From IMG/VR virus record IMGVR_UViG_3300043411_000921, positions 124,001 to 188,000 of that record: a stretch of DNA of 64,000 nt, one strand, 5' to 3'. Below the pieces are notes generated by a model. It was given only the letters and a program-made list of their open reading frames with translations, made no database searches and was not told where the DNA came from. The translations under genes and the position numbers were made by a program. Shown piece by piece: positions 31,267-48,020 of this stretch. How positions within the stretch are numbered: the stretch's first letter is position 1; each line of letters starts with the position of its first letter.

Positions 31267-31583
31267 CCAAAGCAATGGATTGCCCGTTTAGGATTGGTGG
31301 ATTGTATCGGTGGAAGGGATTGACTCCTCCTTACAGCCCAGAGAATTTTTTCCACCTTTACCCTTGCGGACACGGAAGCAACAATTCTCGCAATTCTACA
31401 AACTCTTCGTATCGAGCCGCCCCAGGCACATGGTTTGTTTTCTTGGCGGTGATTCCCAGCGGACCAAACTTTTTTGCAACTTGTTTGGCACCCGATGGAA
31501 CCGTTCACGAAGCATCTATTCCTCACAGTGGATTGTATTGTTGGGAAGAAGTAACGGAACAAGAAGGAATGGAAAAACAATGA
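31263..31583 (+). CDS. small hypothetical protein (FRIGGLY motif)
   Basis: 4-nt overlaps with both neighbours. Confidence 0.65.
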   Translation: MTKAMDCPFRIGGLYRWKGLTPPYSPENFFHLYPCGHGSNNSRNSTNSSYRAAPGTWFVFLAVIPSGPNFFATCLAPDGTVHEASIPHSGLYCWEEVTEQEGMEKQ

Positions 31584-34291: not shown

Positions 34292-34921
34292 ATGTTTGAA
34301 ATCACAACAGATAGCCCCAATTTTTCAAAGCCAGAACAATCTGAAACCGGAGATATTCTCCTCCGATACCGTTCTCCTGGAATCATCTATGTCAACCGAT
34401 TCAACGAGGAAGCAGCTAAGGAGTTCCACCAGGAAATGATTAACGCTCAAAACACTGGGCAAACCGTTATTCCCATTGTGGTTGATTCTTACGGTGGGGA
34501 AGTTTATTCCCTTCTCAAGATGATTGATGTCATCAAAGCTTCAAAGATTCCAGTTTCAACCATTTGTCTTGGGAAAGCAATGTCTTGTGGAGCAGTTCTC
34601 TTGAGTTGTGGATCTCCAGGAATGAGATATGCTGCTCCTTATGCAACAGTCATGATTCACGATGCTGCTTCTTACGCTGCCGGAAAGTGTGAGGAAATCA
34701 AAGCAGAAGCAAAGGAAGTCGAACGTTTGAACAAGATGATTTTCAGAATCATGGCTGAGAATGCCAGTAAGCCAGCGGATTATTTCTCAAAAATCGTTCA
34801 CGAGAAGGGACATGCCGATTGGTACCTCGAACCAGAAGAAGTTAAGGAACATGGTCTGATTGATTTTGTTTCTGTTCCCAAGTTGAAGGTTGAGTTCAAG
34901 GCAACGGTGAGTTTCCAATGA
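34292..34921 (+). CDS. clpP: ClpP-family serine protease
   Basis: DSYGG, GKAMSCG, MIH, DWY, GLID. Confidence 0.92.
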   Translation: MFEITTDSPNFSKPEQSETGDILLRYRSPGIIYVNRFNEEAAKEFHQEMINAQNTGQTVIPIVVDSYGGEVYSLLKMIDVIKASKIPVSTICLGKAMSCGAVLLSCGSPGMRYAAPYATVMIHDAASYAAGKCEEIKAEAKEVERLNKMIFRIMAENASKPADYFSKIVHEKGHADWYLEPEEVKEHGLIDFVSVPKLKVEFKATVSFQ

Positions 34922-35910
34922 CCAATGCAACTCCTGAAAATCCTGATATCATCCTGATTGCCGCCGCTTCTTTGGATGGTTACATCGGAATTGACAACAA
35001 GTTGCCCTGGCATTCCCCAGCCGACATGAAACACTTCCGCCAACAGACAGAGGGTCATGTCGTGATCATGGGAAGAAAAACCTTTGATAGCCTTGGCGGA
35101 AAACCACTGAAAAACAGGGTCAACATCATTTTGACCCGGAATGGAAATCTTGAGACTCATGGCACCGAACCCCTGTTTGCCAGCTCAAAACAGCAAGCAT
35201 TGATGATTGCAAAAACACAATGCGAGTTCTTAAACTCGAAAAAAATCTTTGTCATTGGAGGCGAAGAGATTTACGCCCAGTTCCTTGAAGATGCCACAGA
35301 AATTCTTCTAACGACATTCAACGTGCGATTGGGCCCGCTTGGACCTCTTATCGACGCATACACATACACTCCCAGACTTTCTAAGTTTCCCAATTGGGAA
35401 ACGTTTCAAAAGGATGGCGGCTGGATTCCTTATGCTTATTGTTCCGATGAGTTTGATTCAAACGCAACACTGACTCCAAGCGGGGAAGAAGTGTTTGAAA
35501 CTCTTGAAAAAGAGAACAATGGATTGAGTTACACAATTTCTCCTCTTCAGAAACTCGTAAGAGATGTTGGATATCTTGTGAAAGAGAAGCCAACACCAAC
35601 TCCTGAGCTTGGTCAATATGAAAAACTGGCTTTAGAGATCGGATCGTTGGTTCAGTCCAAGAACAAGACTTATGGTTCTGCTTTTGACAAGGCTGGAGAG
35701 TTTTTGTCTGTGTTGTTTCCGAACGGTGTTCCTGTTGACCGATACAAAGACATGCTCTGTTTGGTCAGGATGTTCGACAAGATGATGAGGATTTCAACCT
35801 CTGAGTTTGAAGGAACAGATGAAAAGAGAGAAGAGGCTTACCGCGATCTGGCTGGATATTCTCTTCTTGGTTTGAACTCTGAAAAGATGAGCAAGGAGAA
35901 GAAAGCATGA
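34918..35910 (+). CDS. folA: dihydrofolate reductase fused to a DUF1599/Nmad1-like helical domain
   Basis: IGIDNKLPW, MGRKTF, LKNRVN, IGGEEIY; C-terminal KNKTYG, DKMMRI, DLAGY. Confidence 0.88.
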   Translation: MTNATPENPDIILIAAASLDGYIGIDNKLPWHSPADMKHFRQQTEGHVVIMGRKTFDSLGGKPLKNRVNIILTRNGNLETHGTEPLFASSKQQALMIAKTQCEFLNSKKIFVIGGEEIYAQFLEDATEILLTTFNVRLGPLGPLIDAYTYTPRLSKFPNWETFQKDGGWIPYAYCSDEFDSNATLTPSGEEVFETLEKENNGLSYTISPLQKLVRDVGYLVKEKPTPTPELGQYEKLALEIGSLVQSKNKTYGSAFDKAGEFLSVLFPNGVPVDRYKDMLCLVRMFDKMMRISTSEFEGTDEKREEAYRDLAGYSLLGLNSEKMSKEKKA

Positions 35911-36140
35911 AAGTTTTGAACGAAAGGGTTTTGGGGGTTCAAGGGCCTTGGCTTATCAAGGGTCGCTATGTCCAATACTCAACAAGGGAACAAGGAACCT
36001 TTCACAGGCCCGAACTTGTTTTTGAAAAGCAGCCTGGGATTCAGCAGGGCCTAGAGGTTGGCTTCTCCCTTGAAGATATTGGAAGATTTCAAGCATTGTT
36101 GAAACAATATGCTGCTGAGAACTATCACTCCACTTCCTAG
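35907..36140 (+). CDS. hypothetical protein
   Basis: ATGA-coupled, GGAG RBS. Confidence 0.6.
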   Translation: MKVLNERVLGVQGPWLIKGRYVQYSTREQGTFHRPELVFEKQPGIQQGLEVGFSLEDIGRFQALLKQYAAENYHSTS

Positions 36141-36904
36141 AACAATCCTTCCAACTCACTCCTGATCTGCTCTCTGCTCTTCCTAATCGAATCCACAACC
36201 TTCCTCTCTTGATAAGAAAGAGGGGAAACAGGAATGGATTTATCTCCCAATCCCAGAGAAGCAGGATACCTTAACACCTTCTCTCCATTCTCTTCTGCCG
36301 CTTCCAACAAGGATGTTGTTTCGTAGTAGGTGCAAACAGGTTCATTTAAGAACCATTGCTTTAACTCGGAGTAGTGTTCCAGGTACCCATCCAGGGTATT
36401 TCCGATCAAGTAGCTGGAAAACATCCTTCCTCCAGACTCCCCTCTTTTCCTTGTGGTGTCGATACTCAGTTCTTTTGGTGCATACACGGAGAGGTACAAC
36501 AACTCATATCCGTTCACCTTGCAGAACTCAATTTCGTCTCTATACCTTCTCTGCCCTGTGCCTTCGATAACAAAAGACTTGAGCTGACTTTCAAACCCTC
36601 GCTGAAGGCCCTTGGCGTGTTTTCTGGAGTCGTCTCTGTATCTTTTCAGGGTCGCATCCACATCGGGAGGTTATCGCCCAGAAAAGGCGTTTTGAACCGT
36701 TATGCCCCTGCTTCTCAAATCCTCATCCGAGTTAATCAAATCCTCTAGCTTTTCATCCAGGTTCACAAAACCCACATTGGCCTTCTTCAAGATTTCTTTG
36801 ACGAAGAATGTTTTACCTGCCCCCAGTGGTCCTTGAAGCAACAAGATTTTGGGTTTGGTATTGCTTGAACTCTCGAACAGAAGGCGTGCTAAACTGGTAT
36901 TCAC
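36137..36904 (-). pseudogene. zeta-toxin/AAA_33-like P-loop kinase interrupted by one in-frame TAA (36671-36673)
   Basis: GPLGAGKT, FVNLD, FVIEGT, RKRGESGGR all in one frame; leader ARLLFE|S. Confidence 0.7.
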
Positions 36905-36914
36905 CAAGTTAGAT

Positions 36915-37814
36915 ATGAAAAAACACAACCACCTTTATTCCATCCTGGGTGTAGAACCATCTGCAACCCAAGAACAAATCAAAACCGCTTACAGAGCAAA
37001 AGCTCTCAAGACACATCCTGATCGCAACCAAAACAATCCCAAGGCAGAAGAGGAATTCAAGGAAATCACTTCGGCCTATGAAACTCTCTCCAACCCAGAG
37101 AAGAGAACCGAATATGATTTGTTGCAAAATCCACCTGTTCATCCGTTTCCAAACACTGATGAGTTTTTCTCTTACAGGTGGTCAACGCAACAGGCTCGCA
37201 ATCGCTCAGAAAGGGTCCATGCGGGCGACGTAAGGATTGGTATGGGTGAGACCCTAACAGAACAAATCCGTGACGTAGAAATGGCGATTAGAGCCTCCTG
37301 CACCAAATGCCTCGGTCTTGGGATGAGAGGCATGGAAGATTTCTGCTCCAACTGCGAGGGAAGAGGTTGGAATTTTACCAATAGAAGCTTCCCTGTGAAA
37401 ATTCCCGCTGGTGTTTTTGACGGTTATACCGTTTCAACAAAGGTTCCAGGTGTTGGAGAACTTCAAACCAAGGTGTTGCTGGACATCCCAGAAAACATCA
37501 AACTTGGGCCAACGGGAAAAGTTGTGATGTCCCTGGATATTCCTTATCATCTTGCAGTGCTCGGTGGCCCATTGAAGTTGGACTTGTTTGATGGATCCAG
37601 TGTAACTGTGAAAGTTCCACCATTGAAGAAGCCAAAACAGATGTTGAAGTTGGCTGGGAAGGGGTTGGTGGTCCAGCCAGGAGGGAAGAGTCGAGGGGAT
37701 TTGTTTTTGAGTTTTGGGATTGAGTACCCACCAACGAACTTGTCTGACGAGTACAAGACAACCGTTGAGAAGCTTGCCACATTGTACTCACAAGAACAGG
37801 AAGGTAACAAATGA
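36915..37814 (+). CDS. dnaJ: DnaJ co-chaperone
   Basis: J-domain HPD, two CxxCxGxG repeats, C-terminal GKG..RGDL. Confidence 0.92.
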   Translation: MKKHNHLYSILGVEPSATQEQIKTAYRAKALKTHPDRNQNNPKAEEEFKEITSAYETLSNPEKRTEYDLLQNPPVHPFPNTDEFFSYRWSTQQARNRSERVHAGDVRIGMGETLTEQIRDVEMAIRASCTKCLGLGMRGMEDFCSNCEGRGWNFTNRSFPVKIPAGVFDGYTVSTKVPGVGELQTKVLLDIPENIKLGPTGKVVMSLDIPYHLAVLGGPLKLDLFDGSSVTVKVPPLKKPKQMLKLAGKGLVVQPGGKSRGDLFLSFGIEYPPTNLSDEYKTTVEKLATLYSQEQEGNK

Positions 37815-38062
37815 AACAGACATACAAACTCAGTTATAGATTCATCGCTCAATTGGCAAAACTGGTTCAACTCAGCATGTTGACTGGTGAGCCTCTCAAG
37901 GAAAACATGCTGCAAATGCGTGTTGAGGTTGGTGGAGAAGATGGAAATGAGATTGTTCTGACTCCAGAATACGAGGAGTATTTCGAGAACTGTCTTGAAA
38001 CTCTGCTCCAGCAAGCTGATGCAATCCAAGAGAATATGCGAAACACTCCCGCCGAAGCCTGA
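37811..38062 (+). CDS. hypothetical protein
   Basis: Coupled to dnaJ. Confidence 0.7.
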   Translation: MKQTYKLSYRFIAQLAKLVQLSMLTGEPLKENMLQMRVEVGGEDGNEIVLTPEYEEYFENCLETLLQQADAIQENMRNTPAEA

Positions 38063-38063
38063 T

Positions 38064-38270
38064 CTATTTCGTTCGTTTCATCACAAGCCCAAAAATCAGG
38101 GCTGCAAATCCAAACAAAGAAAAACACAGGAACTCACCGTTACTGATCTTTCCAAAATAGTGAAGGAACATGACAGTGATCAAAATGACAATGCCAAAAA
38201 AACCAGTTAGGAGAATAATTGCGTTCTCCTGACGGTCTTCTGGGGCGGTATTATTGTCGTTGTTATTCAT
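38064..38270 (-). CDS. small two-TM membrane protein
   Basis: Two hydrophobic helices; last gene of an early operon. Confidence 0.65.
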   Translation of the reverse strand: MNNNDNNTAPEDRQENAIILLTGFFGIVILITVMFLHYFGKISNGEFLCFSLFGFAALIFGLVMKRTK

Positions 38271-38499
38271 CGACTGTCTCTCCTGGAAATATCAGTTCTT
38301 TAATCCCAGAGGTGAACCACAAGCCAAAAATACGAGTTGTGATCCTATCTTCACACAGCAACTCGCATTCGATGCAAGTTTTTCCGCCAGGAAGATGAAT
38401 GGTTCTCGAAGAAAGAACCAACATGTAACTGGATTCGAGATAGGGCGACTCGTACAATAACAAAGTGCCTGCTGGATATAAGTCGCTTGTTTTACTCAT
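38263..38499 (-). CDS. PG-x-LL array protein
   Basis: YPAGTLL. Confidence 0.65.
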   Translation of the reverse strand: MSKTSDLYPAGTLLLYESPYLESSYMLVLSSRTIHLPGGKTCIECELLCEDRITTRIFGLWFTSGIKELIFPGETVDE

Positions 38500-38746
38500 A
38501 ATCATTTGGGTTTACTTCCCTCAAACCGAGGGCAACCCAACCGTCCCCTTTTGCATTTTCAACATTTCCATCTGGAGACAAGATGTCGTACTGAGTAAGG
38601 GATTCTCCATTTTGGAAATTAAACACTTTTGAAGAAAGGATTAGATAGAAACCTCTTGGGAACACATGCTCGCTGTATTTCAAGGCCCAGTCCGTCAACT
38701 CCAGCAAAGTTCCAGGTGAATACAGCTTGTTTGGATCAGTCATCAT
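38492..38746 (-). CDS. PG-x-LL array protein
   Basis: YSPGTLL. Confidence 0.65.
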   Translation of the reverse strand: MMTDPNKLYSPGTLLELTDWALKYSEHVFPRGFYLILSSKVFNFQNGESLTQYDILSPDGNVENAKGDGWVALGLREVNPNDYE

Positions 38747-38993
38747 AATCCGTTGTTTCCACTTTCTCAAAAATTTCAAACATGCCTACCACGTCCCACA
38801 CCATTTCCTTTCCCGTTTTGGCAAAAAGCAAGGTGACTTGCTCAAAAGTTGGATGGTGTGCAACTACCACACAGTAATCTCCAAGTCCTTCATCTTCCCA
38901 ACTGCTTTCTTCGACATCTTTGACACGCAAGAGGGTTCCGATGGGAAATTCTCGAAACGTTTGTGCCCACCATTTGTCAGCTTTTTTCATCAC
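38736..38993 (-). CDS. PG-x-LL array protein
   Basis: FPIGTLL. Confidence 0.65.
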   Translation of the reverse strand: MMKKADKWWAQTFREFPIGTLLRVKDVEESSWEDEGLGDYCVVVAHHPTFEQVTLLFAKTGKEMVWDVVGMFEIFEKVETTDYDD

Positions 38994-39241
38994 TGTTCAA
39001 CGTCTCCATCTTCCAACTCGACAACCGCCATATGTTTTACTGGTGAACCATCCCCGTATGTCAGGCTCCAAGTTTGGACTTCCCCACACTTGTCCAAAGC
39101 AAGGATAGTTTTGTGCTTTCCTTGCGGTGGTAAAACCATTACGACGAGAAGAAATCCTTTTCTGAGAGAGTATGGATGAGAGTAATCCAGCAACATCCCA
39201 GCGATTAAATCTTCATCAGATCCTATTGGTCTTGTTTTCAT
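38990..39241 (-). CDS. PG-x-LL array protein
   Basis: MKTRPI..LIAGMLL. Confidence 0.65.
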   Translation of the reverse strand: MKTRPIGSDEDLIAGMLLDYSHPYSLRKGFLLVVMVLPPQGKHKTILALDKCGEVQTWSLTYGDGSPVKHMAVVELEDGDVEQ

Positions 39242-39501
39242 TCTTCATCCGTTGTCTCGACTACAACAAAACCTTCGTACTGCATTAGTTTCCAATTCCA
39301 TTCATGCAATTCCCCCGAAGGTTCCAAAAAAGTAAACAATTCAAAATTTCCTGACGAATACCTCCCGTCCGGTTTGCGATCTACTAGCAAGTAAAACCCC
39401 AAATCCCAAGCAACAAGACAGGTGGTGCTGGCCTCCTCACCTCCACGATACAGGAGAATCCCCAGCCTGGGTTCAACTTTTGATAACGGCTTGGTTTTCA
39501 T
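39238..39501 (-). CDS. PG-x-LL array protein
   Basis: MKTKPL..RLGILL. Confidence 0.65.
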   Translation of the reverse strand: MKTKPLSKVEPRLGILLYRGGEEASTTCLVAWDLGFYLLVDRKPDGRYSSGNFELFTFLEPSGELHEWNWKLMQYEGFVVVETTDEE

Positions 39502-39504
39502 TCT

Positions 39505-39777
39505 TTATTGTTCTTCTGTGTCTTCTGGGAATGCCACCAACAGAGTTTCTTTGATCAACATTTGTACGTTCCAAAAATAGACTTTGCAATCATCTTCCAA
39601 GACACAAATCTCTCCAAGTCTAAGATCTTCACCTACCCCAACAACGAGGTAGAATTGCATTTGCCCATCTTCTCTCGGTGTGTAATGGTAACTCGTAGGA
39701 TTAGCCATCAATAGCACCCCCGAAAAGATTTCTTCCTCTTTGGGAGGCAGGAATGGTAAAGATGTTGTTGGTGTCAT
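39505..39777 (-). CDS. PG-x-LL array protein
   Basis: IFSGVLL. Confidence 0.6.
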   Translation of the reverse strand: MTPTTSLPFLPPKEEEIFSGVLLMANPTSYHYTPREDGQMQFYLVVGVGEDLRLGEICVLEDDCKVYFWNVQMLIKETLLVAFPEDTEEQ

Positions 39778-40115
39778 GTTTGTGATGCTGGGGTGTAGGC
39801 ATATCGCCAAGTGTTGTTGCTGCAAATCAACCTGTTACCATTCGGATCTAAGAACTCTTGAAATCTAGCAGAAGTCGGCGCAATGACTTCTCTTAAAAAA
39901 ACCAAGTGGTATGGGAGTGCTCCACAAAGATAGCCATAAAGATAGCTTTCCCCGTAGAGGATATCAAAAAACTCTCGCTCGGTTAGTTTAGAATAGTCGG
40001 CTGGGAGTTTAGAATTATACCATACTCTAAAGACGAAATGTGTTTCCTCTTTATAGGCATTGAGTTCAAGGAGTTCCCCTGGGCTTAGGCGTTGTACCAT
40101 GCCTGTTTTTACCAC
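39774..40115 (-). CDS. PG-x-LL array protein
   Basis: LSPGELL. Confidence 0.65.
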   Translation of the reverse strand: MVKTGMVQRLSPGELLELNAYKEETHFVFRVWYNSKLPADYSKLTEREFFDILYGESYLYGYLCGALPYHLVFLREVIAPTSARFQEFLDPNGNRLICSNNTWRYAYTPASQT

Positions 40116-40390
40116 GAATCCTCAAGGACTTCAATGAAAACAGGGGGATGTCCTGGTCCGGGCGTTTCTTCTCCGCCCATAGGAACCAAACAATCCCAGT
40201 CGAACCACCTTTCTTGACCTTCTGAGTTTACCACCTCACCAGGAAAGTTGGGCTTGATGTAGCCGAGGAATTTGAGATATGCGCCGGTTTTTTTGGCAAC
40301 AATTCCAACCATCTCAGTTCGATCAAAATACCCAGCGGGGAAAAATACAACACGAACCAAAGCTCCTAGTTTGAACTTGTCCGGGTTCAT
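40109..40390 (-). CDS. PG-x-LL array protein
   Basis: FKLGALV. Confidence 0.65.
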   Translation of the reverse strand: MNPDKFKLGALVRVVFFPAGYFDRTEMVGIVAKKTGAYLKFLGYIKPNFPGEVVNSEGQERWFDWDCLVPMGGEETPGPGHPPVFIEVLEDSW

Positions 40391-40611
40391 GGATCTTCTT
40401 GCGGCTCTGCGATCTGAACGATTCGATAATCAGAGTCAAGGTATCTTTCCGTACATGCCATTGGGAGATGAGTCGGACTAATCGTGTCAATCATTTTTGA
40501 CACTTCTCCATTCCTAAACTTATGCCAACCCAGACAAACACGAAAGATGTCGGGGCTGTCAATATTTTGAAGTAGGGTTCCTGGAGGGTATTTTGCGGGA
40601 ACTGGTTTCAT
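40387..40611 (-). CDS. PG-x-LL array protein
   Basis: YPPGTLL. Confidence 0.65.
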   Translation of the reverse strand: MKPVPAKYPPGTLLQNIDSPDIFRVCLGWHKFRNGEVSKMIDTISPTHLPMACTERYLDSDYRIVQIAEPQEDP

Positions 40612-40832
40612 TCCACAGCCTCTTCATCATCATCGCAAATAATTTCTTGCTGATAAAGTGCGCTAAATCGAGTTTCCATGATCTCTCCTTTGTGAACCCA
40701 CAAAGACCAATATACTCTTCGTTCTTTGTCCACTCTGATAATCGTCTCGATTTCATCTGTTGGATCTTCTACATCCACCAGCAACATACCCGGATGGAGG
40801 TCGTCAAAAGATTTGATTGGCCTTGTTTTCAT
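40608..40832 (-). CDS. PG-x-LL array protein
   Basis: MKTRPI..LHPGMLL. Confidence 0.65.
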   Translation of the reverse strand: MKTRPIKSFDDLHPGMLLVDVEDPTDEIETIIRVDKERRVYWSLWVHKGEIMETRFSALYQQEIICDDDEEAVE

Positions 40833-41029
40833 TGTGAATCTTCATCCTCTTCCATTGGAACGATCTCATACCAATCTTCCACATAGTTTTTACTTACCAC
40901 AATGACATTGAACCCATTGGAGTCTGCTGCGAGAAGGCGAACGGTGTTTTTTAGTGGATCTTCGTCAAGATATACACGGAACCGCGAAGGAATGTTGTAC
41001 TTGTTTTTGAGCAGCGTTCCTGGTTTCAT
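40829..41029 (-). CDS. PG-x-LL array protein
   Basis: MKPGTLL, TAATG-coupled to the upstream gene. Confidence 0.65.
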   Translation of the reverse strand: MKPGTLLKNKYNIPSRFRVYLDEDPLKNTVRLLAADSNGFNVIVVSKNYVEDWYEIVPMEEDEDSQ

Positions 41030-42093
41030 TATCGGCGTGGGAAGGTGTGACGGCCACGATTGTAGGAATAAGCGGGGAAAACCGGCATGTTGACCATTGA
41101 AGTTTGAATCTCTTCGGTGAAACAAAAGCCAGCAGCTTTGATGCAATCGAGCACAGATGCCTTTTCCGTGGCACGGAACACCCAGGTGCGGGTAGAGTCC
41201 ACATAAGACCGATTGGACGCCTGGATATTCTTCTTGAGGGCTTCCACGAGCTTTGGAGTCTTGCCAGCAACCCAGGGAACGTCCAGGGTGATAACCGTGG
41301 GCCAGCAAACCACCCTTGCACCATCTCGGGCTGCTGCAATAGAGTTTTGCTGAGGATTTACAGCGATCCACTCCTCACACATCTTGATGATGTTGGGAAC
41401 ATCCCCCTCAAAGCACGGCCAATACTCCATCACAACTTCAACAAAAGCCTTGTGAGACTTCGCTGGACAAGTGAAAGTCCGACCGGAGAGCTTGGGAAAA
41501 ACAACTCCGGGAATCTTGCGCATCGCATTCCACCCAGCCTTGTTCTTGCTTCCAGTCAAACTGATAAGGCCATTTTCAAACTTCAGGGTTGCTTCACCCG
41601 TGCTGCTCTTTCCAGCAAGCACGCCAGCAAGGCCAGGATAACCCAGAGACTTGACAACTTGAATCAAGCAAGTCTTGTTTTGGGTGCTGATTCCAACGAA
41701 GGAGAGCATGAAGTCTACGATCTTGACAATGGGACGATAATCCTCACCAGCAAGATAAAACCCACTGTCGCCCTCGTTCTTTTCCTGGAGCTTCTCGTTC
41801 TTCTGCATGAGGAGTTCGAGGGTTGCAGCCCAGATGGGTTGAATGGCGAGGGGAAGTCCGTCAGGAACCACAGACATTCCATAGAGTGTGGCTGCTGAGA
41901 AATTTGCGGGAACAGTGCGAGCAAAAAGCGCGGTGTCCTTCTTCGCGCAGATGGGGCCGATGCCACGCTCCCAGGAAGCGGGATCGGTCAATGCGGCGAA
42001 GCATCGAGAACAATGACGGACATCATTGCAACTCCGAGTGATGCTCGGAAACATGTTGAGGATATCTTGAAAGCTGGTCGTGGCGTTCTTCAT
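41029..42093 (-). CDS. DUF6011-type zinc-finger early protein
   Basis: CSRC..LTDPASWERGIGPIC. Confidence 0.8.
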   Translation of the reverse strand: MKNATTSFQDILNMFPSITRSCNDVRHCSRCFAALTDPASWERGIGPICAKKDTALFARTVPANFSAATLYGMSVVPDGLPLAIQPIWAATLELLMQKNEKLQEKNEGDSGFYLAGEDYRPIVKIVDFMLSFVGISTQNKTCLIQVVKSLGYPGLAGVLAGKSSTGEATLKFENGLISLTGSKNKAGWNAMRKIPGVVFPKLSGRTFTCPAKSHKAFVEVVMEYWPCFEGDVPNIIKMCEEWIAVNPQQNSIAAARDGARVVCWPTVITLDVPWVAGKTPKLVEALKKNIQASNRSYVDSTRTWVFRATEKASVLDCIKAAGFCFTEEIQTSMVNMPVFPAYSYNRGRHTFPRR

Positions 42094-42099
42094 GACCAG

Positions 42100-42128
42100 A
42101 CTCTATCACGGCTTCTCGGGTGGGTCAA
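42100..42128 (-). promoter_or_regulatory. early sigma70-like promoter
   Basis: TTGACC-N17-(TGa)TAGAGT, ATG 6 nt downstream. Confidence 0.82.
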
Positions 42129-42134
42129 GAGCCT

Positions 42135-43322
42135 TTATCTGGCCTGTGCGATTTTTTCTGGGAGGGCTACATTCCAGAGATTTGCCTTGGCTGTCCTTGA
42201 CTTGGTAAACCCCAAAGACTCCAACTTCTTTGCCATTAGCTGAGGCTTATAGTTCGAAACATGAACCAAGCATTTCTCTTCCTTCAAAAACAACATCCTC
42301 GCTTGGATAATCTCCTGAAGGGAAGACTTGGGCTCTTTATCTGTCCAGGGTCGAAGGGAAGAAAAAAACTCCCGGTCCCCATCCTTCAAAGCTCGAACCT
42401 CTTCCAACCCAATCTTCAAATTAGGCTTGTTCTTCTTCAACCAAGAGAAGTAAATCTCATTGACCTTCTCAAAAGATGTATTGAATGCCGGATACTTCGT
42501 TACCGAGTCAATAACTTGTGTAGCTTCATCAAAAAATTCACAATAGTTTTCAAAATGTTTTAGGTAAGCGGAGCAAAGTTTTTCTAGTTGAGCACGTTCT
42601 GCCCCTTTGGCTCTGTCAGAGGAAAGAAGTCTGTGGAGAACAATGTTTCTAACGCCAACTGGGACGGGTTCGGTTTTCATTTTTTCTCTGACATGCTCGA
42701 TTGTTCCAGTTGACCAGTCAGACAGAGAGGACTTAGCCGCCATCTTTGATTTGGTCGTTGTTGTTTTTTGTGTCTTGGTTGATTTCCTTGATTTTAGTGC
42801 GTTGAGGAATTTTTCTGGTAGGTCTTGAATTTCATTCGGACAGACTTCGCCATAAGTGCCACGAGTATGTTTGCTTGGTGGAATAACAACATAACCGTCT
42901 TGGCCTCGTGTATCTACCTTGTCCGCCAAATGGGATGCAGTGTTTTTTGTCGGGGTCGATGTCCAAAACCAAAAATGCCACCCACCAGATCCAGTCCGAT
43001 AGTGAAAAGTCGAAGAAAGTTCCTTTATGATTGGGTGATCTGCCGCATCAACATCAACAACAATAAGATATTTCCCAGTTTTTTCAGATTTTCGTCCTGT
43101 TGCGAGGCCAAAGTTCATTTTGTGACTGAGAGAAAACCACTCTTCAACCTTTTCTGGTTTATTGCTGGCAATGATTTTCCAATTGTAACGAAAGAGTGGG
43201 TGTTTTCCAGGAGAAGCGCAGTTTTGTTCGCCACACGAACAAGTGTTGTTAAGCCGAATCGAATAAAGTGGAAGTATGTGAAATTTGTTTTCCAGAATGA
43301 TTTGTTTAATTGATGATGGCAT
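42135..43322 (-). CDS. bifunctional DNA primase/polymerase (Prim-Pol)
   Basis: CSCG..C.SPGKHP, NFGLATG, VVDVD, TGSGGWH, DTRGQDGYVVIPPS, GVRN. Confidence 0.9.
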   Translation of the reverse strand: MPSSIKQIILENKFHILPLYSIRLNNTCSCGEQNCASPGKHPLFRYNWKIIASNKPEKVEEWFSLSHKMNFGLATGRKSEKTGKYLIVVDVDAADHPIIKELSSTFHYRTGSGGWHFWFWTSTPTKNTASHLADKVDTRGQDGYVVIPPSKHTRGTYGEVCPNEIQDLPEKFLNALKSRKSTKTQKTTTTKSKMAAKSSLSDWSTGTIEHVREKMKTEPVPVGVRNIVLHRLLSSDRAKGAERAQLEKLCSAYLKHFENYCEFFDEATQVIDSVTKYPAFNTSFEKVNEIYFSWLKKNKPNLKIGLEEVRALKDGDREFFSSLRPWTDKEPKSSLQEIIQARMLFLKEEKCLVHVSNYKPQLMAKKLESLGFTKSRTAKANLWNVALPEKIAQAR

Positions 43323-43360
43323 TTCAACCTCAAAGTATCAGGTTGAAATGCCATCATCAA
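43310..43360. repeat. perfect 21-bp inverted repeat covering the Prim-Pol start codon and promoter
   Basis: ttgatgatggcatttcaacct-N9-aggttgaaatgccatcatcaa. Confidence 0.9.
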
Positions 43361-43575
43361 GAGACTCTTTCGACCACCGCGCCCGCAGGGATCGCCCCCG
43401 CGTCCGTGGTGGAGCCGCGAGTGCCGCCGCTCGTGCGGTAGTAGTAGGTCGTCGAGGGCGCGGGAGCGCCGACGCGCGGGGCGAAGGCCCCGCGGAGGGG
43501 CGCAGGGATGGGCTTATACAGCCCAGGGGCGATCGATGGCGAGGGCGGGGCGAGGCCTGCGGTATAGGTGCTCAT
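43357..43575 (-). CDS. small Pro-rich protein (high-GC island)
   Basis: GAGGT RBS, GC-rich codons. Confidence 0.65.
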   Translation of the reverse strand: MSTYTAGLAPPSPSIAPGLYKPIPAPLRGAFAPRVGAPAPSTTYYYRTSGGTRGSTTDAGAIPAGAVVERVS

Positions 43576-44660
43576 GGCGGCACCTCACGAGAGCGTCGGG
43601 GTCGAGGAGTCCCACCGCAGCCACAGGCCCGCGGCATAAATCCAGTACTCGGTCGTGCCGTCGAGCGTCTGGCCATTGGCCCGGCCCGCCACGGTGGCCC
43701 ACCGGATGCCGCGCGCAAATCCGACCCACCCCGTCGTGGTGGACGGCGCGCCCGCACACATCACGGGGACCGGCAGCGGCACCTCGTACCCGCTGCTAGG
43801 CAGCGCGCCGCCCTGCTCGCCTTCGGGCGGCGCCAGCCGCCCGTAGGTGCCGAAGAGCGACGCGAAGGTGACCCGCTGGTTGCTGCCAGCCCCGACGAAT
43901 CGCTTGTAGATCAGGGCGTAACCCGTCTGGAGGGCCACCCCGGCTGCCGCGTAGACCGTCAAACCCGTGGCGTTGTAGTACCCGACCCACAGGGGTGGGT
44001 CCGTGTCGCTCGGGTCGGGCGAGTCGAGGGGTACGTCGGCAAGGAGAGTGCGGACATTGCCGCCACCGCTCGGGAGGCACATGAGTCGCCAGCCGAAGTC
44101 GTCGATGTCGTCTGCCGAGATGAAGAGCCGCCCGGGCGTTGCCGTGAATGCCGACGCTGCCGAGAAAAGCTCCGTCGCGTCCGTCGCCGTAGGCAGCACC
44201 GTAGCGGTGCCACCCGTGACGAACCCCGCCGCGCTGCGAGAGATGGTCCACGCGGCATCGCTCGCGCCGCGCTGGAAGAGCCACTCGCGGCTTGAATCCG
44301 GCGAACGCACGGTGAACCACGCGGAGGTGTTGCCGAGGTTGCCCGCGCCGCTACCGCCGCTGCCGTAGGGGTTGGCGCTGAGCGGTGGGTTGGCGCTGAG
44401 CGGTGCGCCGGTGCGGTCGGTGTAGGTGGTCGCGTCCGACCATCGCGTGATGACCCACCCCGCGGAGAGCAGGGTGTCGATGAGCGCGTCGACGGCGACA
44501 GCGCCCGACGCGGGCGAGGATACGTGTGTGATAGTGGCCATGTGTCAGCTCCCGATCATCGAGGCAGCGGCGCAGATAAGCCAACGGTATGAGCCATCGG
44601 TGGGCAAGAGTTGCGCCGCCGAGATGAGGGTCTGCTGGTCGGCTGCCGTTGGGGCTGGTG
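43370..44660. other. high-GC horizontally acquired island
   Basis: Counted 60-nt lines inside are 65-80% GC versus 30-47% just to the left. Confidence 0.85.
43585..44541 (-). CDS. putative tail/receptor-binding accessory protein (high-GC island)
   Basis: Gly/Ala/Thr/Trp-rich beta protein downstream of the tail fibre; GGAG RBS. Confidence 0.7.
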   Translation of the reverse strand: MATITHVSSPASGAVAVDALIDTLLSAGWVITRWSDATTYTDRTGAPLSANPPLSANPYGSGGSGAGNLGNTSAWFTVRSPDSSREWLFQRGASDAAWTISRSAAGFVTGGTATVLPTATDATELFSAASAFTATPGRLFISADDIDDFGWRLMCLPSGGGNVRTLLADVPLDSPDPSDTDPPLWVGYYNATGLTVYAAAGVALQTGYALIYKRFVGAGSNQRVTFASLFGTYGRLAPPEGEQGGALPSSGYEVPLPVPVMCAGAPSTTTGWVGFARGIRWATVAGRANGQTLDGTTEYWIYAAGLWLRWDSSTPTLS

Positions 44661-44685
44661 TAGTGAGATTTTCCAAGTATGCCAT
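44545..44685 (-). CDS. 46-aa chimeric mini-ORF at the island junction
   Basis: MAYLENLTTPAPTAADQQTLISAAQLLPTDGSYRWLICAAASMIGS; TAGTTA at 44703-44698. Confidence 0.45.
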   Translation of the reverse strand: MAYLENLTTPAPTAADQQTLISAAQLLPTDGSYRWLICAAASMIGS

Positions 44686-44708
44686 TGTGTTAAAATCTAA
44701 CTACAGTT

Positions 44709-47111
44709 TCACCCAAAAAACACGGCTGAAAATAGCGCATAGTCGGAAATGCCTCCTCCGCTCTTGTTGACCCTCAATTCCAAAACTCTTGAAGAACCAG
44801 TGGCAACAAAAGAAGCTGTTTTGTGCGTTGGGGTTGTCTCAGTCCATGACAAAGAAGAAAGAGATGATGAGTTAACAAGATCATACAATTCCACACTTCC
44901 AGTGACTCCGGCTACGGAAGCAAAACCAATGCCTTCGAGTGTGTAGGATGGAGAATTTAGATCTGTAAAAAGAGCGTAACCCGCGATGGTGCTTGCAGAA
45001 AGGGTTGTTGTGACAACCCCAGCCAGAATTGGGATTTTACTTGAGGCAGAGAGTTCCCACTGACCAATTGTGTTGTAGTTTGCTGTAATGCCGGAACTTC
45101 CTGTCAAGAAAGGATTTCCGTTTGTAGTAGTGTTCAAAGAACCCGTTATGCCACCAAAGACTTCAAATGAACCTGTTACTTGAACGGAGCCGGAAGCAAC
45201 TCTAAAAACATCGTGCCGATTAAAACTACTATCCCCGTCCCCGACAACAAAAAGAGAGGAAGCATCTTGAATGTTGAATTTTCCGAATGCGGCTTGTGTC
45301 GTTGTGGGGTCAAGATTCCCAGCGGTTTCTCCTTCTGCGATTGTTCCAAGCCCCGCAGCGAAGCTTCCACTGCCATTCGCAATCGTTTGCCAACCTGTGG
45401 TGTGGGAGGCTGGGCCGTTCGTTAAAGTGTAGTAGCCTTCGGCGTGGGAATAGCTGCCGTTGGTTGATGAACCAACCCCTTCTGCGTGGGAATGCTCTGC
45501 GCCAGTGGTTGTTCCATTTCCCTCAGCGTGAGAAAAATTACCATTTGCTGTTGAAAAAAAGCCTTCAGCGTGCCCACCGAGAGCGTTAGATTTTGCGAAA
45601 TAACCTTCTGCGTGTGCAGCGTATGCTGCTGCTGTTGTAAACACACCTTCCGCATGGGAAAAGAACCCAGATGCTTGTGTGCTTGAACCTTCGGCGTGAG
45701 TGGCTTGGCTTGATGCAATAGTGTCTTGGCCTTCGGCGTGAGAGTTGTCACCGGATGCAATGTTTCTTATTCCCTGGGTTACGCTTCCAGTGATTTCGGC
45801 CCCCAAAGAGGCACTTAGTTTTGCAATTTCGATAGAGCTGGTCGTGTAAATGATTGTGCTGTTTATTTCAGACCAGAGGCTTGTTCCACCAGAAGAGCCA
45901 GAAATTTCCCACTGGCCGTTTGTGTTGTAGACTGTTGTGATACCCGGCCCACCAATCAAAAACGGACTACCATCGACGGTACCACTCAAAGAACCAGTGA
46001 TTTTTGAAGAGATGAACGACCCAGTTACTTCAACCGAGGTGTCATTAACTCTGAAAATATCAGATCTGAGAAAATCATCATCATCTGTTCCGTTTCCAAC
46101 AACGAACAATGAGAAATCGTTGTTGCGAAGATTATACTTTCCAACTACATTTTGTCCAGAGCCAGATGCGATTGTTCGGATACCGGAAGCGTGTGAAAAG
46201 TCGCCTGGGGTGTCGGTGTAGGAACCTTCGGCATGTGACCAGTTTCCAATAGCGTTTGTCTCAAATCCTTCAGCGTGCGATCCCACCCCAAACGCTTCTG
46301 CGCCTTCCCCTTCTGCGTGGTTATAATCGGCATGTGCTCTTGTCATTCTCCCTTCTGCGTGGGAATAATCGCCAGAAGCAATTGTCATTGTGCCTTCTGC
46401 ATGGGAACCAAGACCTGAAGAAGTCGCCATTCTCCCTTCTGCGTGGGAATTGATTCCACTGGCGAGTGTACCATCTCCCTCCGAGTGACCACCAGCACCT
46501 GATGCCGTTGTTGCAAAACCTTCTGCGTGCGAATGATTTCCAGAAGCAGTAGAATTGTACCCTTCCGAATGAGAATAGTCGCCCGAAGCGACTCCATATT
46601 GGCCTTCCGAGTGACTACACAAACCCGAAGCCACTGTTTCTTCTCCTGATGCGACAGAAGATCCGGTGGCATAGCTGCCAATTCCAGCGATCACACTAGA
46701 TCCTGTGACAACGAGACTGATTTCCCCAACAAATTCATTTCGGATTTGAACAGATCCAGTGGAGTAGGTACTACCTGAGATGTCTGAGAACCAGATTTGG
46801 GCACTGCCCCCACTTGCGCCAGAACCATCAACAGACAGGTTCCCAGAGACGTGTAGATCCCCTCCAAAAACCGCAATAGTAGGCGTGCTACCTCCCTTGC
46901 CCCCAACCGATCCAGAGACGTAGAAAAAGGCGTCAGAGCCGATTGGCGAGGTGTCAAAAATAGCAGGGTTGATATTCCCCTGGTTGGCTGGAGTTCCTTG
47001 AGCACTCAAAGGATAAACAAGAAGGCATTCGGCGGAACCCGCATTGGCTCCGCTGACAATCAGCTTGTTTACTTGAATTTGATCGGAACGAAAATCTGGT
47101 GAGTTTGGCAT
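44709..47111 (-). CDS. tail fibre / adhesin with YadA-head-like 14-aa SHAEG repeats
   Basis: Two blocks of (S/G)HAEG..T.A.G repeats and many VTGS motifs; TAGTTA upstream. Confidence 0.85.
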   Translation of the reverse strand: MPNSPDFRSDQIQVNKLIVSGANAGSAECLLVYPLSAQGTPANQGNINPAIFDTSPIGSDAFFYVSGSVGGKGGSTPTIAVFGGDLHVSGNLSVDGSGASGGSAQIWFSDISGSTYSTGSVQIRNEFVGEISLVVTGSSVIAGIGSYATGSSVASGEETVASGLCSHSEGQYGVASGDYSHSEGYNSTASGNHSHAEGFATTASGAGGHSEGDGTLASGINSHAEGRMATSSGLGSHAEGTMTIASGDYSHAEGRMTRAHADYNHAEGEGAEAFGVGSHAEGFETNAIGNWSHAEGSYTDTPGDFSHASGIRTIASGSGQNVVGKYNLRNNDFSLFVVGNGTDDDDFLRSDIFRVNDTSVEVTGSFISSKITGSLSGTVDGSPFLIGGPGITTVYNTNGQWEISGSSGGTSLWSEINSTIIYTTSSIEIAKLSASLGAEITGSVTQGIRNIASGDNSHAEGQDTIASSQATHAEGSSTQASGFFSHAEGVFTTAAAYAAHAEGYFAKSNALGGHAEGFFSTANGNFSHAEGNGTTTGAEHSHAEGVGSSTNGSYSHAEGYYTLTNGPASHTTGWQTIANGSGSFAAGLGTIAEGETAGNLDPTTTQAAFGKFNIQDASSLFVVGDGDSSFNRHDVFRVASGSVQVTGSFEVFGGITGSLNTTTNGNPFLTGSSGITANYNTIGQWELSASSKIPILAGVVTTTLSASTIAGYALFTDLNSPSYTLEGIGFASVAGVTGSVELYDLVNSSSLSSLSWTETTPTHKTASFVATGSSRVLELRVNKSGGGISDYALFSAVFFG

Positions 47112-47153: not shown

Positions 47154-48020
47154 TTAGAGGATTTCGGAGGAGATCGTTGCGAGCGACCAGCCTTTCGTGG
47201 ATTTGCGGCGCCCTTTTAGAACCGCGCACAATTTTGTTGGCGCAAGACCGTACAAACGACAAAAAGCTGCCAAGCATTGAATTTCTGTTATCACAACCCC
47301 ATCGGGGCCGATCAGTTGTAATCCCAAATAGGTTTTTGAATTATGATGTTCTGTTCCCATCTTCTTACCCAAATGGGCCAAACGATTTTTTTGCTTGGAT
47401 TCTTCGGTGTGATGTTTGTTGAAATTAGGATGCTTCGAACCTTTCAACACATTTTTTGGACCAAGCTTTTTCTTTTCCGTGCCAACCAAAGTCCACCCTT
47501 TTGTGCTGGGGGCTTGTCGATTTAGCAACTTCCACAAACACTTCGGATTCAAATGGTGTTCTTCTGCAAAACTTGTAACGGAATCGACACTTGTATACAG
47601 AATTAAATCCGGTGAGAGTAGTTGAATATTGCTGTATTGTTTTCCCACCTTCTTGGATCCGTGCGGGGAAGAAGCATCTTTTCTGAGATTGTAACACTTG
47701 TTCTTACCAAAAGAAGAATCAATGTAGCGTTGTTCTACCAACAAACGATCTTCCTTGGTACCACCAACGACTTCCAGAACCTCAAACACGAATACCTCTT
47801 CCCCGCATTTGTCAAAATCGGCTTGCAGATAACGGTTAGAATGCTTCCCTCTTCTTAGGGAAGCGGTGTGCTGATTCCAGCGGACCTTGAAGCATTTTGC
47901 CGAACCAACATAGACTCTTTCGTTGAGTTTGTTTCTGAGTCTATACACACCGCCTTCATTCGATTTCCCTCCGAACTTGTATTCCACAGGACGTAACCTT
48001 TCATGGAATACATAGTTCAA
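47154..48020 (-). mobile_element. free-standing GIY-YIG homing endonuclease
   Basis: GVY..YVGS..R, NUMOD3-like HTEESKQK, two SPD/GPD..KGW repeats. Confidence 0.9.
47156..47184. repeat. 29-bp direct repeat (copy of the phoH 3' end)
   Basis: 28/29 identical to 48043-48071. Confidence 0.9.

What the first reader, a model, noticed from the sequence alone, without database searches (positions are those of the whole stretch)
38263..41029. Array of 11 coupled mini-genes sharing a [FLY]-x-P-G-x-L-L start motif
Seen: eleven consecutive 66-113 aa ORFs, nearly all overlapping their neighbour by a few nt, behind one early promoter (42100-42128) and a DUF6011 zinc-finger gene. Each has a variant of PGTLL/PGMLL/IGTLL, then beta-strands and an acidic tail; three start MKT(R/K)P(I/L). 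No long DNA repeats were apparent, so these look like old, diversified paralogues. Related starts occur at 18605, 31263, 62564, 62934 and 63631. Inference: an expanded SH3/KOW-like small beta-barrel family used as a diversified library of host-binding or anti-defence proteins.
Basis: partly seen in the sequence, partly recalled or inferred. Interest (0 to 1): 0.68.

Follow-up and report, generated by a model that had tools for sequence, protein, structure and literature searches.

The report
Eleven-gene array of small barrel proteins
An uncultured jumbo phage carries eleven back-to-back small genes that are old, fast-diverging copies of one acidic SH3/Tudor-like barrel protein, in a genome slot that is empty or differently filled in related phages; this is the usual signature of host-interaction accessory genes, and their function is unknown.

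Summary
On the minus strand, 38263-41029 holds eleven consecutive ORFs of 66-108 aa. Nine of the eleven junctions overlap by 1-14 nt. All eleven carry G-x-L-(L/V) near the start, against 3 of 157 background ORFs.

They are real genes: dN/dS is 0.09-0.47 across 16 related contigs. They are acidic (pI 4.1-5.6) with acidic tails. Profile comparisons link seven members directly. m9 is recovered by leave-one-out HMM searches. m5 is recovered by an HMM built only from arrays in distant relatives. m4 and m6 rest on motif, pattern and position.

AlphaFold gives m10 a confident five-strand small barrel (pLDDT 87) of the SH3/Tudor/KOW class. The m4 model is weak (pLDDT 63) but has the same kind of neighbours.

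An exhaustive profile search of 1.84 billion proteins found only alleles of this array. Close relatives (flanks 93-99% identical) carry about 50%-identical replacement alleles of m1 and m7, chimeric alleles, and three layouts of the m10/m11 end. In distant relatives the same slot, between the DUF6011 gene and p83/DnaJ, holds 0, 1, 3+1 or 6+1 genes.

The host-binding or anti-defence function remains inference. The "related starts" elsewhere in the window are not shown to be members.

The parts
42100..42128 (-). Sigma-70-like promoter with extended -10 (TTGACC, 17 nt, TAGAGT, TG upstream). It sits 6 nt before the DUF6011 ATG, so the mRNA is probably leaderless.
   Evidence: Scan hit with 9 of 12 matches plus TG; sequence read. 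The same layout (-35-like, TGn-TAnnnT, 6-8 nt, ATG) lies upstream of DUF6011 homologues at 43-51% identity in L018, L019, L021 and L022. Function is not tested.
41029..42093 (-). First gene of the operon: a 354-aa protein with an N-terminal DUF6011 Cys-rich motif. It is the conserved anchor of the slot.
   Evidence: PF19474, E 2.3e-8. 66 homologue clusters down to 31% identity, on jumbo-size contigs. Its stop overlaps the m1 start as TAATG.
40829..41029 (-). m1, 66 aa, pI 4.6, starts MKPGTLL.
   Evidence: HHalign with m3: 71%. Leave-one-out E 0.005, rank 1. A roughly 50%-identity replacement allele in L005 and L009-L011 and a chimeric allele in L006. dN/dS 0.47.
40608..40832 (-). m2, 74 aa, pI 4.5, starts MKTRPI.
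   Evidence: HHalign with m8: 94%. dN/dS 0.09. ATGA overlap with m1.
40387..40611 (-). m3, 74 aa, pI 5.5.
   Evidence: HHalign with m1 71% and with m10 52%. Alleles at 81-86% identity. dN/dS 0.16.
40109..40390 (-). m4, 93 aa, pI 4.8, motif GALV. This is the least supported member.
   Evidence: Not recovered by leave-one-out HMMs. AF2 model has pLDDT 63 with strands 11-16, 25-34, 38-45 and 84-90. Its neighbours are Sm/LSm, bL19 and Tudor barrels at Z 5.0-5.6. dN/dS 0.22.
39774..40100 (-). m5, 108 aa from the ATG (113 aa from the GTG at 40115), pI 5.6. It has an insertion after strand 1 and no acidic tail.
   Evidence: Weak within the window, but it is the top hit of 1060 window ORFs (E 0.0012) for an HMM built only from the L031 and L022 arrays. 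dN/dS 0.38. Gene callers often missed it in relatives, but the ORF is intact in every locus that covers it.
39505..39777 (-). m6, 90 aa from the ATG that gives an ATGA overlap with m5, pI 4.1.
   Evidence: Sequence links are weak (rank 11-12 in leave-one-out). It has the motif GVLL, the family's hydrophobic pattern and the acidic tail. Alleles down to 64% identity. dN/dS 0.30.
39238..39501 (-). m7, 87 aa, pI 4.7, starts MKTKPL.
   Evidence: HHalign with m10 60% and with m8 23%. A 53%-identity replacement allele in L002-L004, L006, L008 and L009, and a chimera in L013-L017. dN/dS 0.41.
38990..39241 (-). m8, 83 aa, pI 5.1, starts MKTRPI.
   Evidence: HHalign with m2: 94%. Leave-one-out E 0.026, rank 1. 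dN/dS 0.44.
38736..38990 (-). m9, 84 aa, pI 4.5.
   Evidence: Leave-one-out rank 1 (E 0.028 and 0.042). Rank 2 for the HMM built from the distant arrays. dN/dS 0.38.
38492..38743 (-). m10, 83 aa, pI 4.5. This is the structurally modelled reference member.
   Evidence: AF2 pLDDT 86.7, pTM 0.75, five strands. SH3/Tudor/KOW-class neighbours. HHalign with m11: 97%. Alleles at 54-57% identity, and a truncated 59-aa copy in L013-L017.
38263..38505 (-). m11, 80 aa, pI 4.7.
   Evidence: HHalign with m10: 97%. Absent from L009 and L010, and replaced in L013-L017. dN/dS 0.42.
38064..38270 (-). TM68, a 68-aa ORF with two hydrophobic helices. It is the last gene of the operon, is coupled to m11 by an 8-nt overlap, and is not a family member.
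   Evidence: Present in all close relatives, with one diverged allele. Distant relatives often have a single 148-192 aa ORF in this slot instead; the two inspected (L018, L021) are membrane, Pro/Ala-rich proteins.
37811..38062 (+). Convergent 83-aa gene (p83), followed upstream on its strand by the phage DnaJ gene (36849-37814). This is the conserved right-hand border of the slot.
   Evidence: p83 and DnaJ flank the slot in L018, L019, L021, L022, L025-L029 and L031.

Best explanation
This is a lineage-specific tandem expansion of one family of small, acidic, SH3/Tudor-like beta-barrel proteins. It sits in a hyperplastic slot of an uncultured jumbo phage, between a conserved DUF6011 gene and a convergent p83-DnaJ pair.

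Shown:
- The eleven genes plus a terminal small membrane gene form one translationally coupled operon. It lies behind a promoter whose layout is conserved and probably yields a leaderless mRNA.
- The genes are under purifying but relaxed selection.
- Co-circulating relatives exchange whole or partial gene bodies, while gene ends and junctions stay constant.
- The slot holds 0 to 11 family members in different lineages.

Inferred: each paralogue is a stand-alone binding module, a barrel with variable loops plus a flexible acidic tail. The modules are made together, probably early from a host-type promoter, and each engages a different or variant host protein or nucleic-acid complex. The purpose would be host takeover or counter-defence. 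Duplication, divergence and cassette exchange would track variation in the host targets.

The confidence given (0.6) is for the whole statement. The structural and evolutionary part alone I put at about 0.85, and the host-binding function at about 0.4.
For: Paralogy:
- The start motif is in 11 of 11 members against 3 of 157 background ORFs.
- In leave-one-out HMM searches, 8 of 11 members rank first among about 1050 other ORFs.
- HHalign gives m10-m11 97%, m2-m8 94%, m1-m3 71%, m7-m10 60% and m3-m10 52%.
- An HMM built only from the distant arrays ranks m5, m9 and m2 as the top 3 of 1060 window ORFs.

Fold:
- The m10 model has pLDDT 86.7 and is a five-strand barrel.
- PDB neighbours are CarD (Z 6.4), FeoA (6.1), UvrD/PcrA Tudor domains (5.7-5.9), EF-P, Mfd (4.7) and NusG KOW (4.6).
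- Many small uncharacterised phage proteins appear as weak neighbours in BFVD, with no match at E <= 0.001.

Coding and selection:
- dN/dS is 0.09-0.47, against 0.05-0.14 for flanking genes.
- Maximum dN is 0.26-0.35 for m1, m6, m7 and m10, against 0.02-0.05 for flanks.

Cassette exchange:
- There are alleles of about 50% identity inside genomes that are 93-99% identical.
- Chimeric alleles exist, and gene ends are invariant.
- Junction repeats are 22-35 nt long.

Accessory status:
- Only 11 clusters were found in 1.84e9 representatives, all of them alleles of this array.
- Slot content is 0, 1, 3+1, 6+1 or 11+1 genes across relatives.

Acidity:
- pI is 4.1-5.6.
- Tails hold 3.4 acidic residues in the last 10, against 1.25 for other coupled genes (p = 0.002).

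Promoter: the layout is conserved across relatives at 43-51% DUF6011 identity.

Background: SH3/Tudor-like barrels are the largest phage-specific fold clusters (PMC12487901). Variable early small-gene regions are established in T4-type phages (PMC2839356, PMC4122927).
Against: - No functional evidence exists. There is no meaningful match in Pfam, PHROGs, PADLOC or PDB sequences.
- Structural Z scores are below 8, so they give a fold class only.
- Only one member has a confident model. m4 has pLDDT 63, and its alignment contained the other members.
- m4 and m6 are tied to the family only by motif, pattern and position.
- Expression timing, the host and any target are unknown. There is no cultured relative.
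- dN/dS is below 1 everywhere, so positive selection is not demonstrated. The pairwise estimates are also not independent of one another.
Confidence: 0.6

Rival explanations
1. The proteins are replication accessory factors. The barrels would work with the upstream Prim-Pol and DUF6011 proteins, for example as Tudor/SH3 adaptor domains like those at the C-termini of UvrD/PcrA, RecD2 or TraI. The acidic tails would act like SSB tails that recruit replisome partners.
For: - The genes share a strand with Prim-Pol and lie directly downstream of it, and they are coupled to the DUF6011 gene.
- The region encodes DnaB, RNR, ThyA, DHFR and an exonuclease.
- Structural neighbours include helicase-associated Tudor/SH3 domains.
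- The acidic tail is a family trait.
Against: - Relatives with the same DUF6011 gene, and mostly the same Prim-Pol neighbour, have no array at all (L019, L029) or only a membrane ORF (L018, L021, L025-L028).
- Replacement alleles at about 50% identity and copy-number change in near-identical genomes are unlike core replication parts.
- dN/dS is 2-4 times that of the flanking genes.
Confidence: 0.12
2. The paralogues are subunits of one hetero-oligomer, such as an Sm/LSm-like ring of related small barrels. Translational coupling would then serve stoichiometric production.
For: - The genes are tightly coupled translationally.
- The m4 model's best neighbours are Sm/LSm proteins.
- Eukaryotic LSm rings are built from paralogues (general knowledge).
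Against: - Member number varies (3, 6, 10, 11) and members are swapped for alleles at about 50% identity. This fits poorly with a fixed assembly.
- The m4 model is of low confidence.
- The m10 model's neighbours are monomeric Tudor/SH3 domains.
- The one complex prediction gave no verdict and counts neither way.
Confidence: 0.08
3. The proteins are packaged, injected internal proteins like the T4 IP family. The shared N-terminus would be a capsid-targeting leader, and its conserved DNA would serve cassette shuffling.
For: - The proteins share N-terminal motifs, and three start MKT(R/K)P.
- The T-even IP locus is a known hypervariable locus of small proteins with a shared leader (own knowledge, not checked in a paper here).
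- Junction DNA repeats coincide with the MKT starts.
Against: - In the m10 model the motif G-T-L-L runs into strand 1 of the barrel, so it is structural and not a detachable leader.
- The locus lies among replication and nucleotide-metabolism genes, not head genes.
- No prohead-protease cleavage motif was identified.
Confidence: 0.07
4. The array is a near-neutral gene nursery: tandem duplicates drifting under weak constraint, with little individual function.
For: - dN/dS is raised relative to flanking genes.
- The array is absent from many relatives.
- A truncated 59-aa copy exists in L013-L017.
- Gene callers skip some members.
Against: - All eleven ORFs are intact in every locus that covers them.
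- dN/dS is well below 1 for every member.
- Divergent alleles keep the barrel core positions.
- The m10 fold is predicted with confidence from only 25 sequences.
- Arrays persist in lineages separated by more than 50% divergence in the anchor protein.
Confidence: 0.13

Closest known systems
Hyperplastic regions of T4-type phages (small early ORFan genes shuffled between close relatives; PMC2839356, PMC4122927)
   Same: - A block of small, non-core genes lies between conserved modules.
- Gene content and alleles differ between otherwise near-identical phages.
- Exchange appears to occur at short conserved boundary sequences.
- A sigma-70-like promoter lies upstream.
   Different: - Here there is one upstream promoter and translational coupling. 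There is no promoter/stem-loop (PeSL) cassette before each gene.
- All members belong to one paralogous family rather than being unrelated ORFans.
- The conserved boundaries are the coding ends of the genes themselves.
SH3/Tudor-like small beta-barrel proteins of phages (the largest phage-specific fold clusters in the Viral AlphaFold Database, PMC12487901), and bacterial RNAP-lobe-binding Tudor domains (CarD/CdnL N-domain, UvrD/PcrA C-domain, Mfd RID)
   Same: - A five-strand small barrel of about 60 residues, with a glycine leading into strand 1.
- These are the best structural neighbours of m10 (Z 4.7-6.4).
- The proteins are small, stand-alone and uncharacterised, like many BFVD hits.
   Different: - There is no sequence match to CarD_TRCF, KOW, Tudor or SH3 Pfam models.
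- Z scores are in the range where only a common arrangement can be claimed.
- No evidence of RNA polymerase binding exists.
- An eleven-fold tandem array was not found in the literature searches.
Phage anti-defence or host-takeover gene clusters (anti-CRISPR loci with aca genes; SPO1 host-takeover module; T4 IP locus)
   Same: - Clusters of small, acidic, fast-evolving, lineage-restricted early proteins.
- High turnover between related phages.
   Different: - No HTH aca-like regulator lies in the operon.
- There is no hit to any known anti-defence or defence-related model.
- Activity is untested.

Membership tests
SH3/Tudor/KOW-class small beta-barrel (fold class) | Five-stranded, strongly bent antiparallel barrel of about 60 residues | tested here: met
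   m10 only. AF2 pLDDT 86.7, strands at 13-16, 32-42, 48-55, 61-65 and 74-76. The top 50 PDB neighbours are nearly all small barrels of this class.
SH3/Tudor/KOW-class small beta-barrel (fold class) | The same fold in all eleven members | tested here: inconclusive
   The m4 model has pLDDT 63, with four strands and Sm/Tudor/bL19 neighbours. Shared hydrophobic pattern in alignments A2 and A5.
CarD_TRCF RNAP-interacting domain (PF02559) | Sequence match to the family model | tested here: not met
   hmmscan of all 11 members against Pfam at E <= 1 gave no CarD_TRCF hit.
CarD_TRCF RNAP-interacting domain (PF02559) | Binds the beta1 lobe of RNA polymerase | not testable with these tools
   The host and its RNAP are unknown. 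The only link is fold similarity at Z 6.4.
KOW motif / NusG-Spt5, EF-P domain I | KOW sequence motif (Pfam PF00467) | tested here: not met
   No Pfam hit. Structural Z is only 4.6-5.3.
Sm/LSm | Sm1/Sm2 sequence motifs and ring oligomers | tested here: inconclusive
   No Pfam LSM hit. Sm neighbours appear only for the low-confidence m4 model. The complex prediction gave no verdict.
T4-type hyperplastic region with PeSL cassettes | Gene content and alleles vary between close relatives | tested here: met
   There are m1 and m7 replacement alleles and three layouts of the m10/m11 end in contigs with 93-99% identical flanks.
T4-type hyperplastic region with PeSL cassettes | A repeated promoter plus stem-loop cassette between genes | tested here: not met
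   Genes overlap or are 3-8 nt apart. No repeated promoter/terminator unit was found: promoter-like sites number 12 against 6.2 expected, terminator-like sites 7 against 7.7. The only repeats are coding junctions.
Anti-CRISPR / anti-defence locus | Homology to a known anti-defence protein, or an adjacent aca-type HTH regulator | tested here: not met
   PHROGs gave no hit. PADLOC gave only chance-level hits, E >= 0.002 in 2 of 25 sequences. No HTH gene lies in the operon.
Diversity-generating retroelement target | A template/variable DNA repeat pair and a reverse transcriptase nearby | tested here: not met
   No repeats longer than 35 nt in 38000-41100. No RT domain was found among the flanking ORFs that were scanned.
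DUF6011 (PF19474), for the anchor gene only | Match above the Pfam gathering score | tested here: met
   33.9 bits against a cut-off of 26.6, residues 26-52.

The most novel reading that the evidence does not exclude
The slot downstream of the DUF6011 gene may be a dedicated expansion site in this jumbo-phage clade. There, a stand-alone barrel module is duplicated, diverged and swapped at conserved gene ends, building a co-expressed library of binders with 3, 6 or 11 members. Each member would neutralise a different host factor or defence variant. This would be a protein-level counterpart of cassette arrays, and it would extend to independent expansions of other families, as in L023.
Probability: 0.25. 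Interest if true: 0.7.

Novelty: new member of a known kind. Interest (0 to 1): 0.45.

Why it matters
Small SH3/Tudor-like proteins are the commonest phage-specific fold, and almost none has a known role. This locus offers eleven natural variants of one such module in a single operon. It also offers naturally swapped alleles and relatives with 0, 3 and 6 copies, which together make a ready comparative series for asking what these modules bind. If the members prove to be host-takeover or counter-defence binders, the array would show how a phage widens its target range by tandem duplication and cassette exchange. If not, it remains an ordinary hypervariable accessory region with an unannotated protein family.

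Tried and rejected
- Nucleotide search of 36000-44000 against cultured phage records gave no match. The DUF6011 protein has no tblastn hit there. The best DnaB hit is 34.5% identical. No cultured relative or host could be named. No tRNA genes lie in the window.
- Pfam, PHROGs, PADLOC and PDB sequence searches of the mini-proteins gave nothing meaningful.
- The family profile search of 1.84e9 representatives and two word-seeded searches returned only alleles of this array, plus L022's own protein. No outside relatives were found.
- I considered that the acidic tails are merely a by-product of encoding the next gene's ribosome-binding site, because GA-rich tails lie upstream of most starts. I rejected this as the sole cause: 20 other coupled genes of the window have ordinary tails.
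31263-31580 has a family-like C-terminal half but no statistical support.
- Complex prediction on m9 + m11 with m10 as partner gave no verdict (ipSAE 0.01). It is evidence neither for nor against binding.
- Literature searches for DUF6011 and for tandem small-protein paralogues in jumbo phages found nothing. One search failed on a term that was too short.

Full report
**Source.** The window is part of IMGVR_UViG_3300043411_000921, a 241-kb viral contig. It encodes Prim-Pol, DnaB, a class II RNR, ThyA, DHFR, PurA, PhoH, DnaJ, a 5'-3' exonuclease and a GIY-YIG endonuclease. It is therefore a jumbo phage. No cultured relative was found.

**The observation.** On the minus strand the order is:
- Prim-Pol (42135-43322);
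- a 41-nt gap;
- a 354-aa gene with a DUF6011 motif (41029-42093);
- eleven small ORFs, m1-m11 (38263-41029);
- a 68-aa two-helix membrane ORF (38064-38270).

This block ends head-on against a plus-strand 83-aa gene (p83) and the phage DnaJ gene. With refined starts the members are 66-108 aa. Junctions are -1, -4, -4, -4, +8, -4, +3, -4, -1, -8, -14 and -8 nt. The first junction reads TAATG. G[TMVIAE]L[LV] occurs within the first 45 residues of all eleven members, against 3 of 157 other ORFs. DNA repeats are limited to 22-35 nt at junctions, where the MKT(R/K)P starts and ETTD-type tails recur.

**Are they genes?** Sixteen related contigs (L002-L017) carry the array. Every ORF is intact in every locus that covers it, although gene callers often skipped m5 and m11. 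Nei-Gojobori dN/dS is 0.09-0.47 for the members, against 0.14 for DUF6011, 0.05 for p83 and 0.10 for DnaJ. The members are therefore coding sequences under purifying but relaxed selection. The pairwise estimates are not independent of one another.

**Are they one family?** Pairwise signals are weak: m2-m8 1e-4, m10-m11 6e-3, m1-m3 0.01. Three further tests add support:
- In leave-one-out HMM searches, 8 of 11 left-out members rank first among about 1050 non-member ORFs.
- Profiles built from ortholog groups link m10-m11 (97%), m2-m8 (94%), m1-m3 (71%), m7-m10 (60%) and m3-m10 (52%).
- An HMM built only from arrays in distant relatives (six L031 and three L022 proteins) puts m5 (E 0.0012), m9 and m2 at ranks 1-3 of 1060 window ORFs, and m10, m1 and m3 at ranks 10, 11 and 17.

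m4 and m6 remain tied to the family only by motif, hydrophobic pattern, tail and position.

**Fold.** With a 25-sequence family alignment, AlphaFold2 gives m10 a pLDDT of 86.7 and pTM of 0.75. The model has five strands and a short helix after strand 1, and G-T-L-L leads into strand 1.

PDB neighbours are small barrels of the SH3/Tudor/KOW class:
- CarD N-domain, Z 6.4;
- FeoA, 6.1;
- TraI translocation-signal domain, 5.9;
- UvrD and PcrA C-terminal Tudor domains, 5.7-5.9;
- RecD2 SH3, 5.5;
- EF-P, 5.1-5.3;
- Mfd, 4.7;
- NusG KOW, 4.6.

All Z values are below 8, so only the fold class can be claimed. The apparent enrichment for RNA-polymerase-lobe binders is a lead, not a result. BFVD returns many small uncharacterised phage proteins, including a T4 ORF from the motB-dexA region, but no match at E <= 0.001. 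The m4 model is weak (pLDDT 63.4). It has four strands, and its neighbours are Sm/LSm, bL19 and Tudor barrels. That is compatible with the family fold but is not proof, and its alignment included the other members.

**Other shared traits.** All members are acidic, with pI 4.1-5.6. Tails hold on average 3.4 acidic residues in the last ten. Twenty other translationally coupled genes of the window average 1.25 (p = 0.002). The tail is therefore a family trait and not only a side effect of coding the next ribosome-binding site.

**Evolution within the lineage.** Flanking genes are 93-99% identical across the close relatives. Within that background:
- m1 has a second allele at about 50% identity (L005, L009-L011).
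- m7 has a second allele at 53% identity (L002-L004, L006, L008, L009).
- m3-m6 range from 64% to 100% identity.
- The distal end has three layouts: m10 plus m11; a single 80-aa m10-like gene (L009, L010); or a truncated 59-aa copy plus an 85-aa m10-like gene (L013-L017).

Chimeric alleles occur, namely m7 in L013-L017 and m1 in L006. The first 12-15 and last 10-12 residues stay constant while the middles differ. This points to recombination within or near the conserved gene ends.

**Evolution beyond the lineage.** The exhaustive profile search of 1.84 billion representatives found 11 clusters, all of them alleles of this array. The DUF6011 protein has homologues at 31-51% identity on other jumbo-size contigs. 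Where the DUF6011...p83/DnaJ synteny is kept (DUF6011 identity 43-51%), the slot is 147-2970 bp long and holds:
- nothing (L019, L029);
- one 148-192 aa ORF (L018, L021, L025-L028), which is a membrane, Pro/Ala-rich protein in the two inspected (L018, L021);
- a 171-aa gene plus three small genes with the x-P-G-x-hydrophobic-hydrophobic start (L022);
- a 160-aa gene plus six such genes (L031);
- eleven such genes plus TM68 (this phage).

The array is therefore an accessory feature of an old, plastic slot.

**Promoter.** The site at 42128-42100 reads TTGACC, 17 nt, TAGAGT, with TG two bases before the -10. It lies 6 nt before the ATG. A scan hit alone means little here: 12 were found against 6.2 expected. 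However, the same layout precedes the DUF6011 homologues of L018, L019, L021 and L022, where the surrounding sequence has diverged. The spacing implies a leaderless or nearly leaderless mRNA. 'Early' is an inference from the host-type promoter.

**Interpretation.** The structural and evolutionary description is well supported. The function is not. Several features fit accessory host-interaction proteins better than replication parts, a fixed hetero-oligomer, packaged internal proteins or neutral drift. These are small size, acidity, a binding-domain fold, co-expression, lineage restriction, relaxed constraint, allele replacement and copy-number change. Each rival keeps some probability (see the rival explanations).

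**Comparison with what is known.**
- Hyperplastic regions of T4-type phages (PMC2839356, PMC4122927) are the closest known phenomenon. This array differs in being a single coupled operon of paralogues without PeSL cassettes.
- SH3/Tudor-like barrels are already known as the largest phage-specific fold clusters (PMC12487901).
- The family itself is unannotated.

I class the finding as a new member of a known kind, with moderate interest.

Noticed in passing
window 42094-42128 (minus); L018, L019, L021, L022 just upstream of position 6001: The promoter-like element before the DUF6011 gene keeps a -35-like hexamer, a TGn extended -10 and only 6-8 nt to the ATG in relatives whose protein is 43-51% identical. 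This suggests a conserved leaderless transcript.
   Followed up: partly
window 62564-62941, 62934-63275, 63631-63966 (plus strand): This is a second small paralogue set. The 125-aa and 113-aa ORFs overlap by 8 nt and are clearly related (phmmer E 7e-15; shared FLGFS...G-F-INSEG block; K-P-G-D-hydrophobic start). The 111-aa ORF is a weak third (E about 0.06). None matches the m-family HMM.
   Followed up: partly
L023 7217-11070: In another jumbo-phage contig (DUF6011 43% identical), the DUF6011 gene is followed by 13 small genes. Five of them form a different paralogous family (phmmer 1e-6 to 0.03; shared G-W-I block), and one has a KTSC domain. This looks like an independent expansion at the same place.
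   Followed up: partly
window 43285-46000: This stretch has 52-55% GC against about 45% elsewhere. It covers a 318-aa Ala/Gly/Thr-rich ORF (43585-44541, minus) with no family hit and the start of an 800-aa ORF (44709-47111) that matches phrog_25468 in five stretches. Relatives differ here: L004 has another gene on the other strand. This may be a horizontally acquired or fibre-like variable region.
   Followed up: partly
window 31263-31580 (plus): A solo 105-aa ORF has a C-terminal half that resembles the family (hydrophobic strand, L-A-P-D-G turn, W, acidic tail). HMM support is only E about 6-9, so membership is unproven.
   Followed up: partly
window 47154-48020 (minus): A GIY-YIG/NUMOD3 homing-endonuclease-like gene lies between the 800-aa ORF and the PIN-PhoH gene.
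   Followed up: no
L002-L008 (for example L002 4653-5054 and 6252-6474): Public gene calls in relatives leave gaps where intact m5 and m11 ORFs lie, and they call m6 from an internal Met. The array is therefore under-annotated in the databases.
   Followed up: yes
window 40559-40756 (minus, alternative frame over m2/m3): A 65-aa ORF in another frame is kept open in all close relatives (65-92 aa). This is probably incidental, given the high nucleotide identity, and it was not tested.
   Followed up: no
L022 7160-7675; L031 7158-7664: The arrays in the two distant lineages both begin with a related 160-171 aa gene that has no counterpart in the window. The shared D-P-D-N-S-D-Y-C-Y-V and P-T-E-F/Y-F-D-F blocks were seen by eye and no comparison was run.
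   Followed up: no
window 59502-60317, 61398-62567, 27276-28109, 34918-35910, 36849-37814: The auxiliary gene set is unusual in breadth for a phage: a Fe/Mn superoxide-dismutase C-domain protein, adenylosuccinate synthetase, thymidylate synthase, DHFR and a full DnaJ. Relatives also carry ClpP next to DHFR.
   Followed up: no
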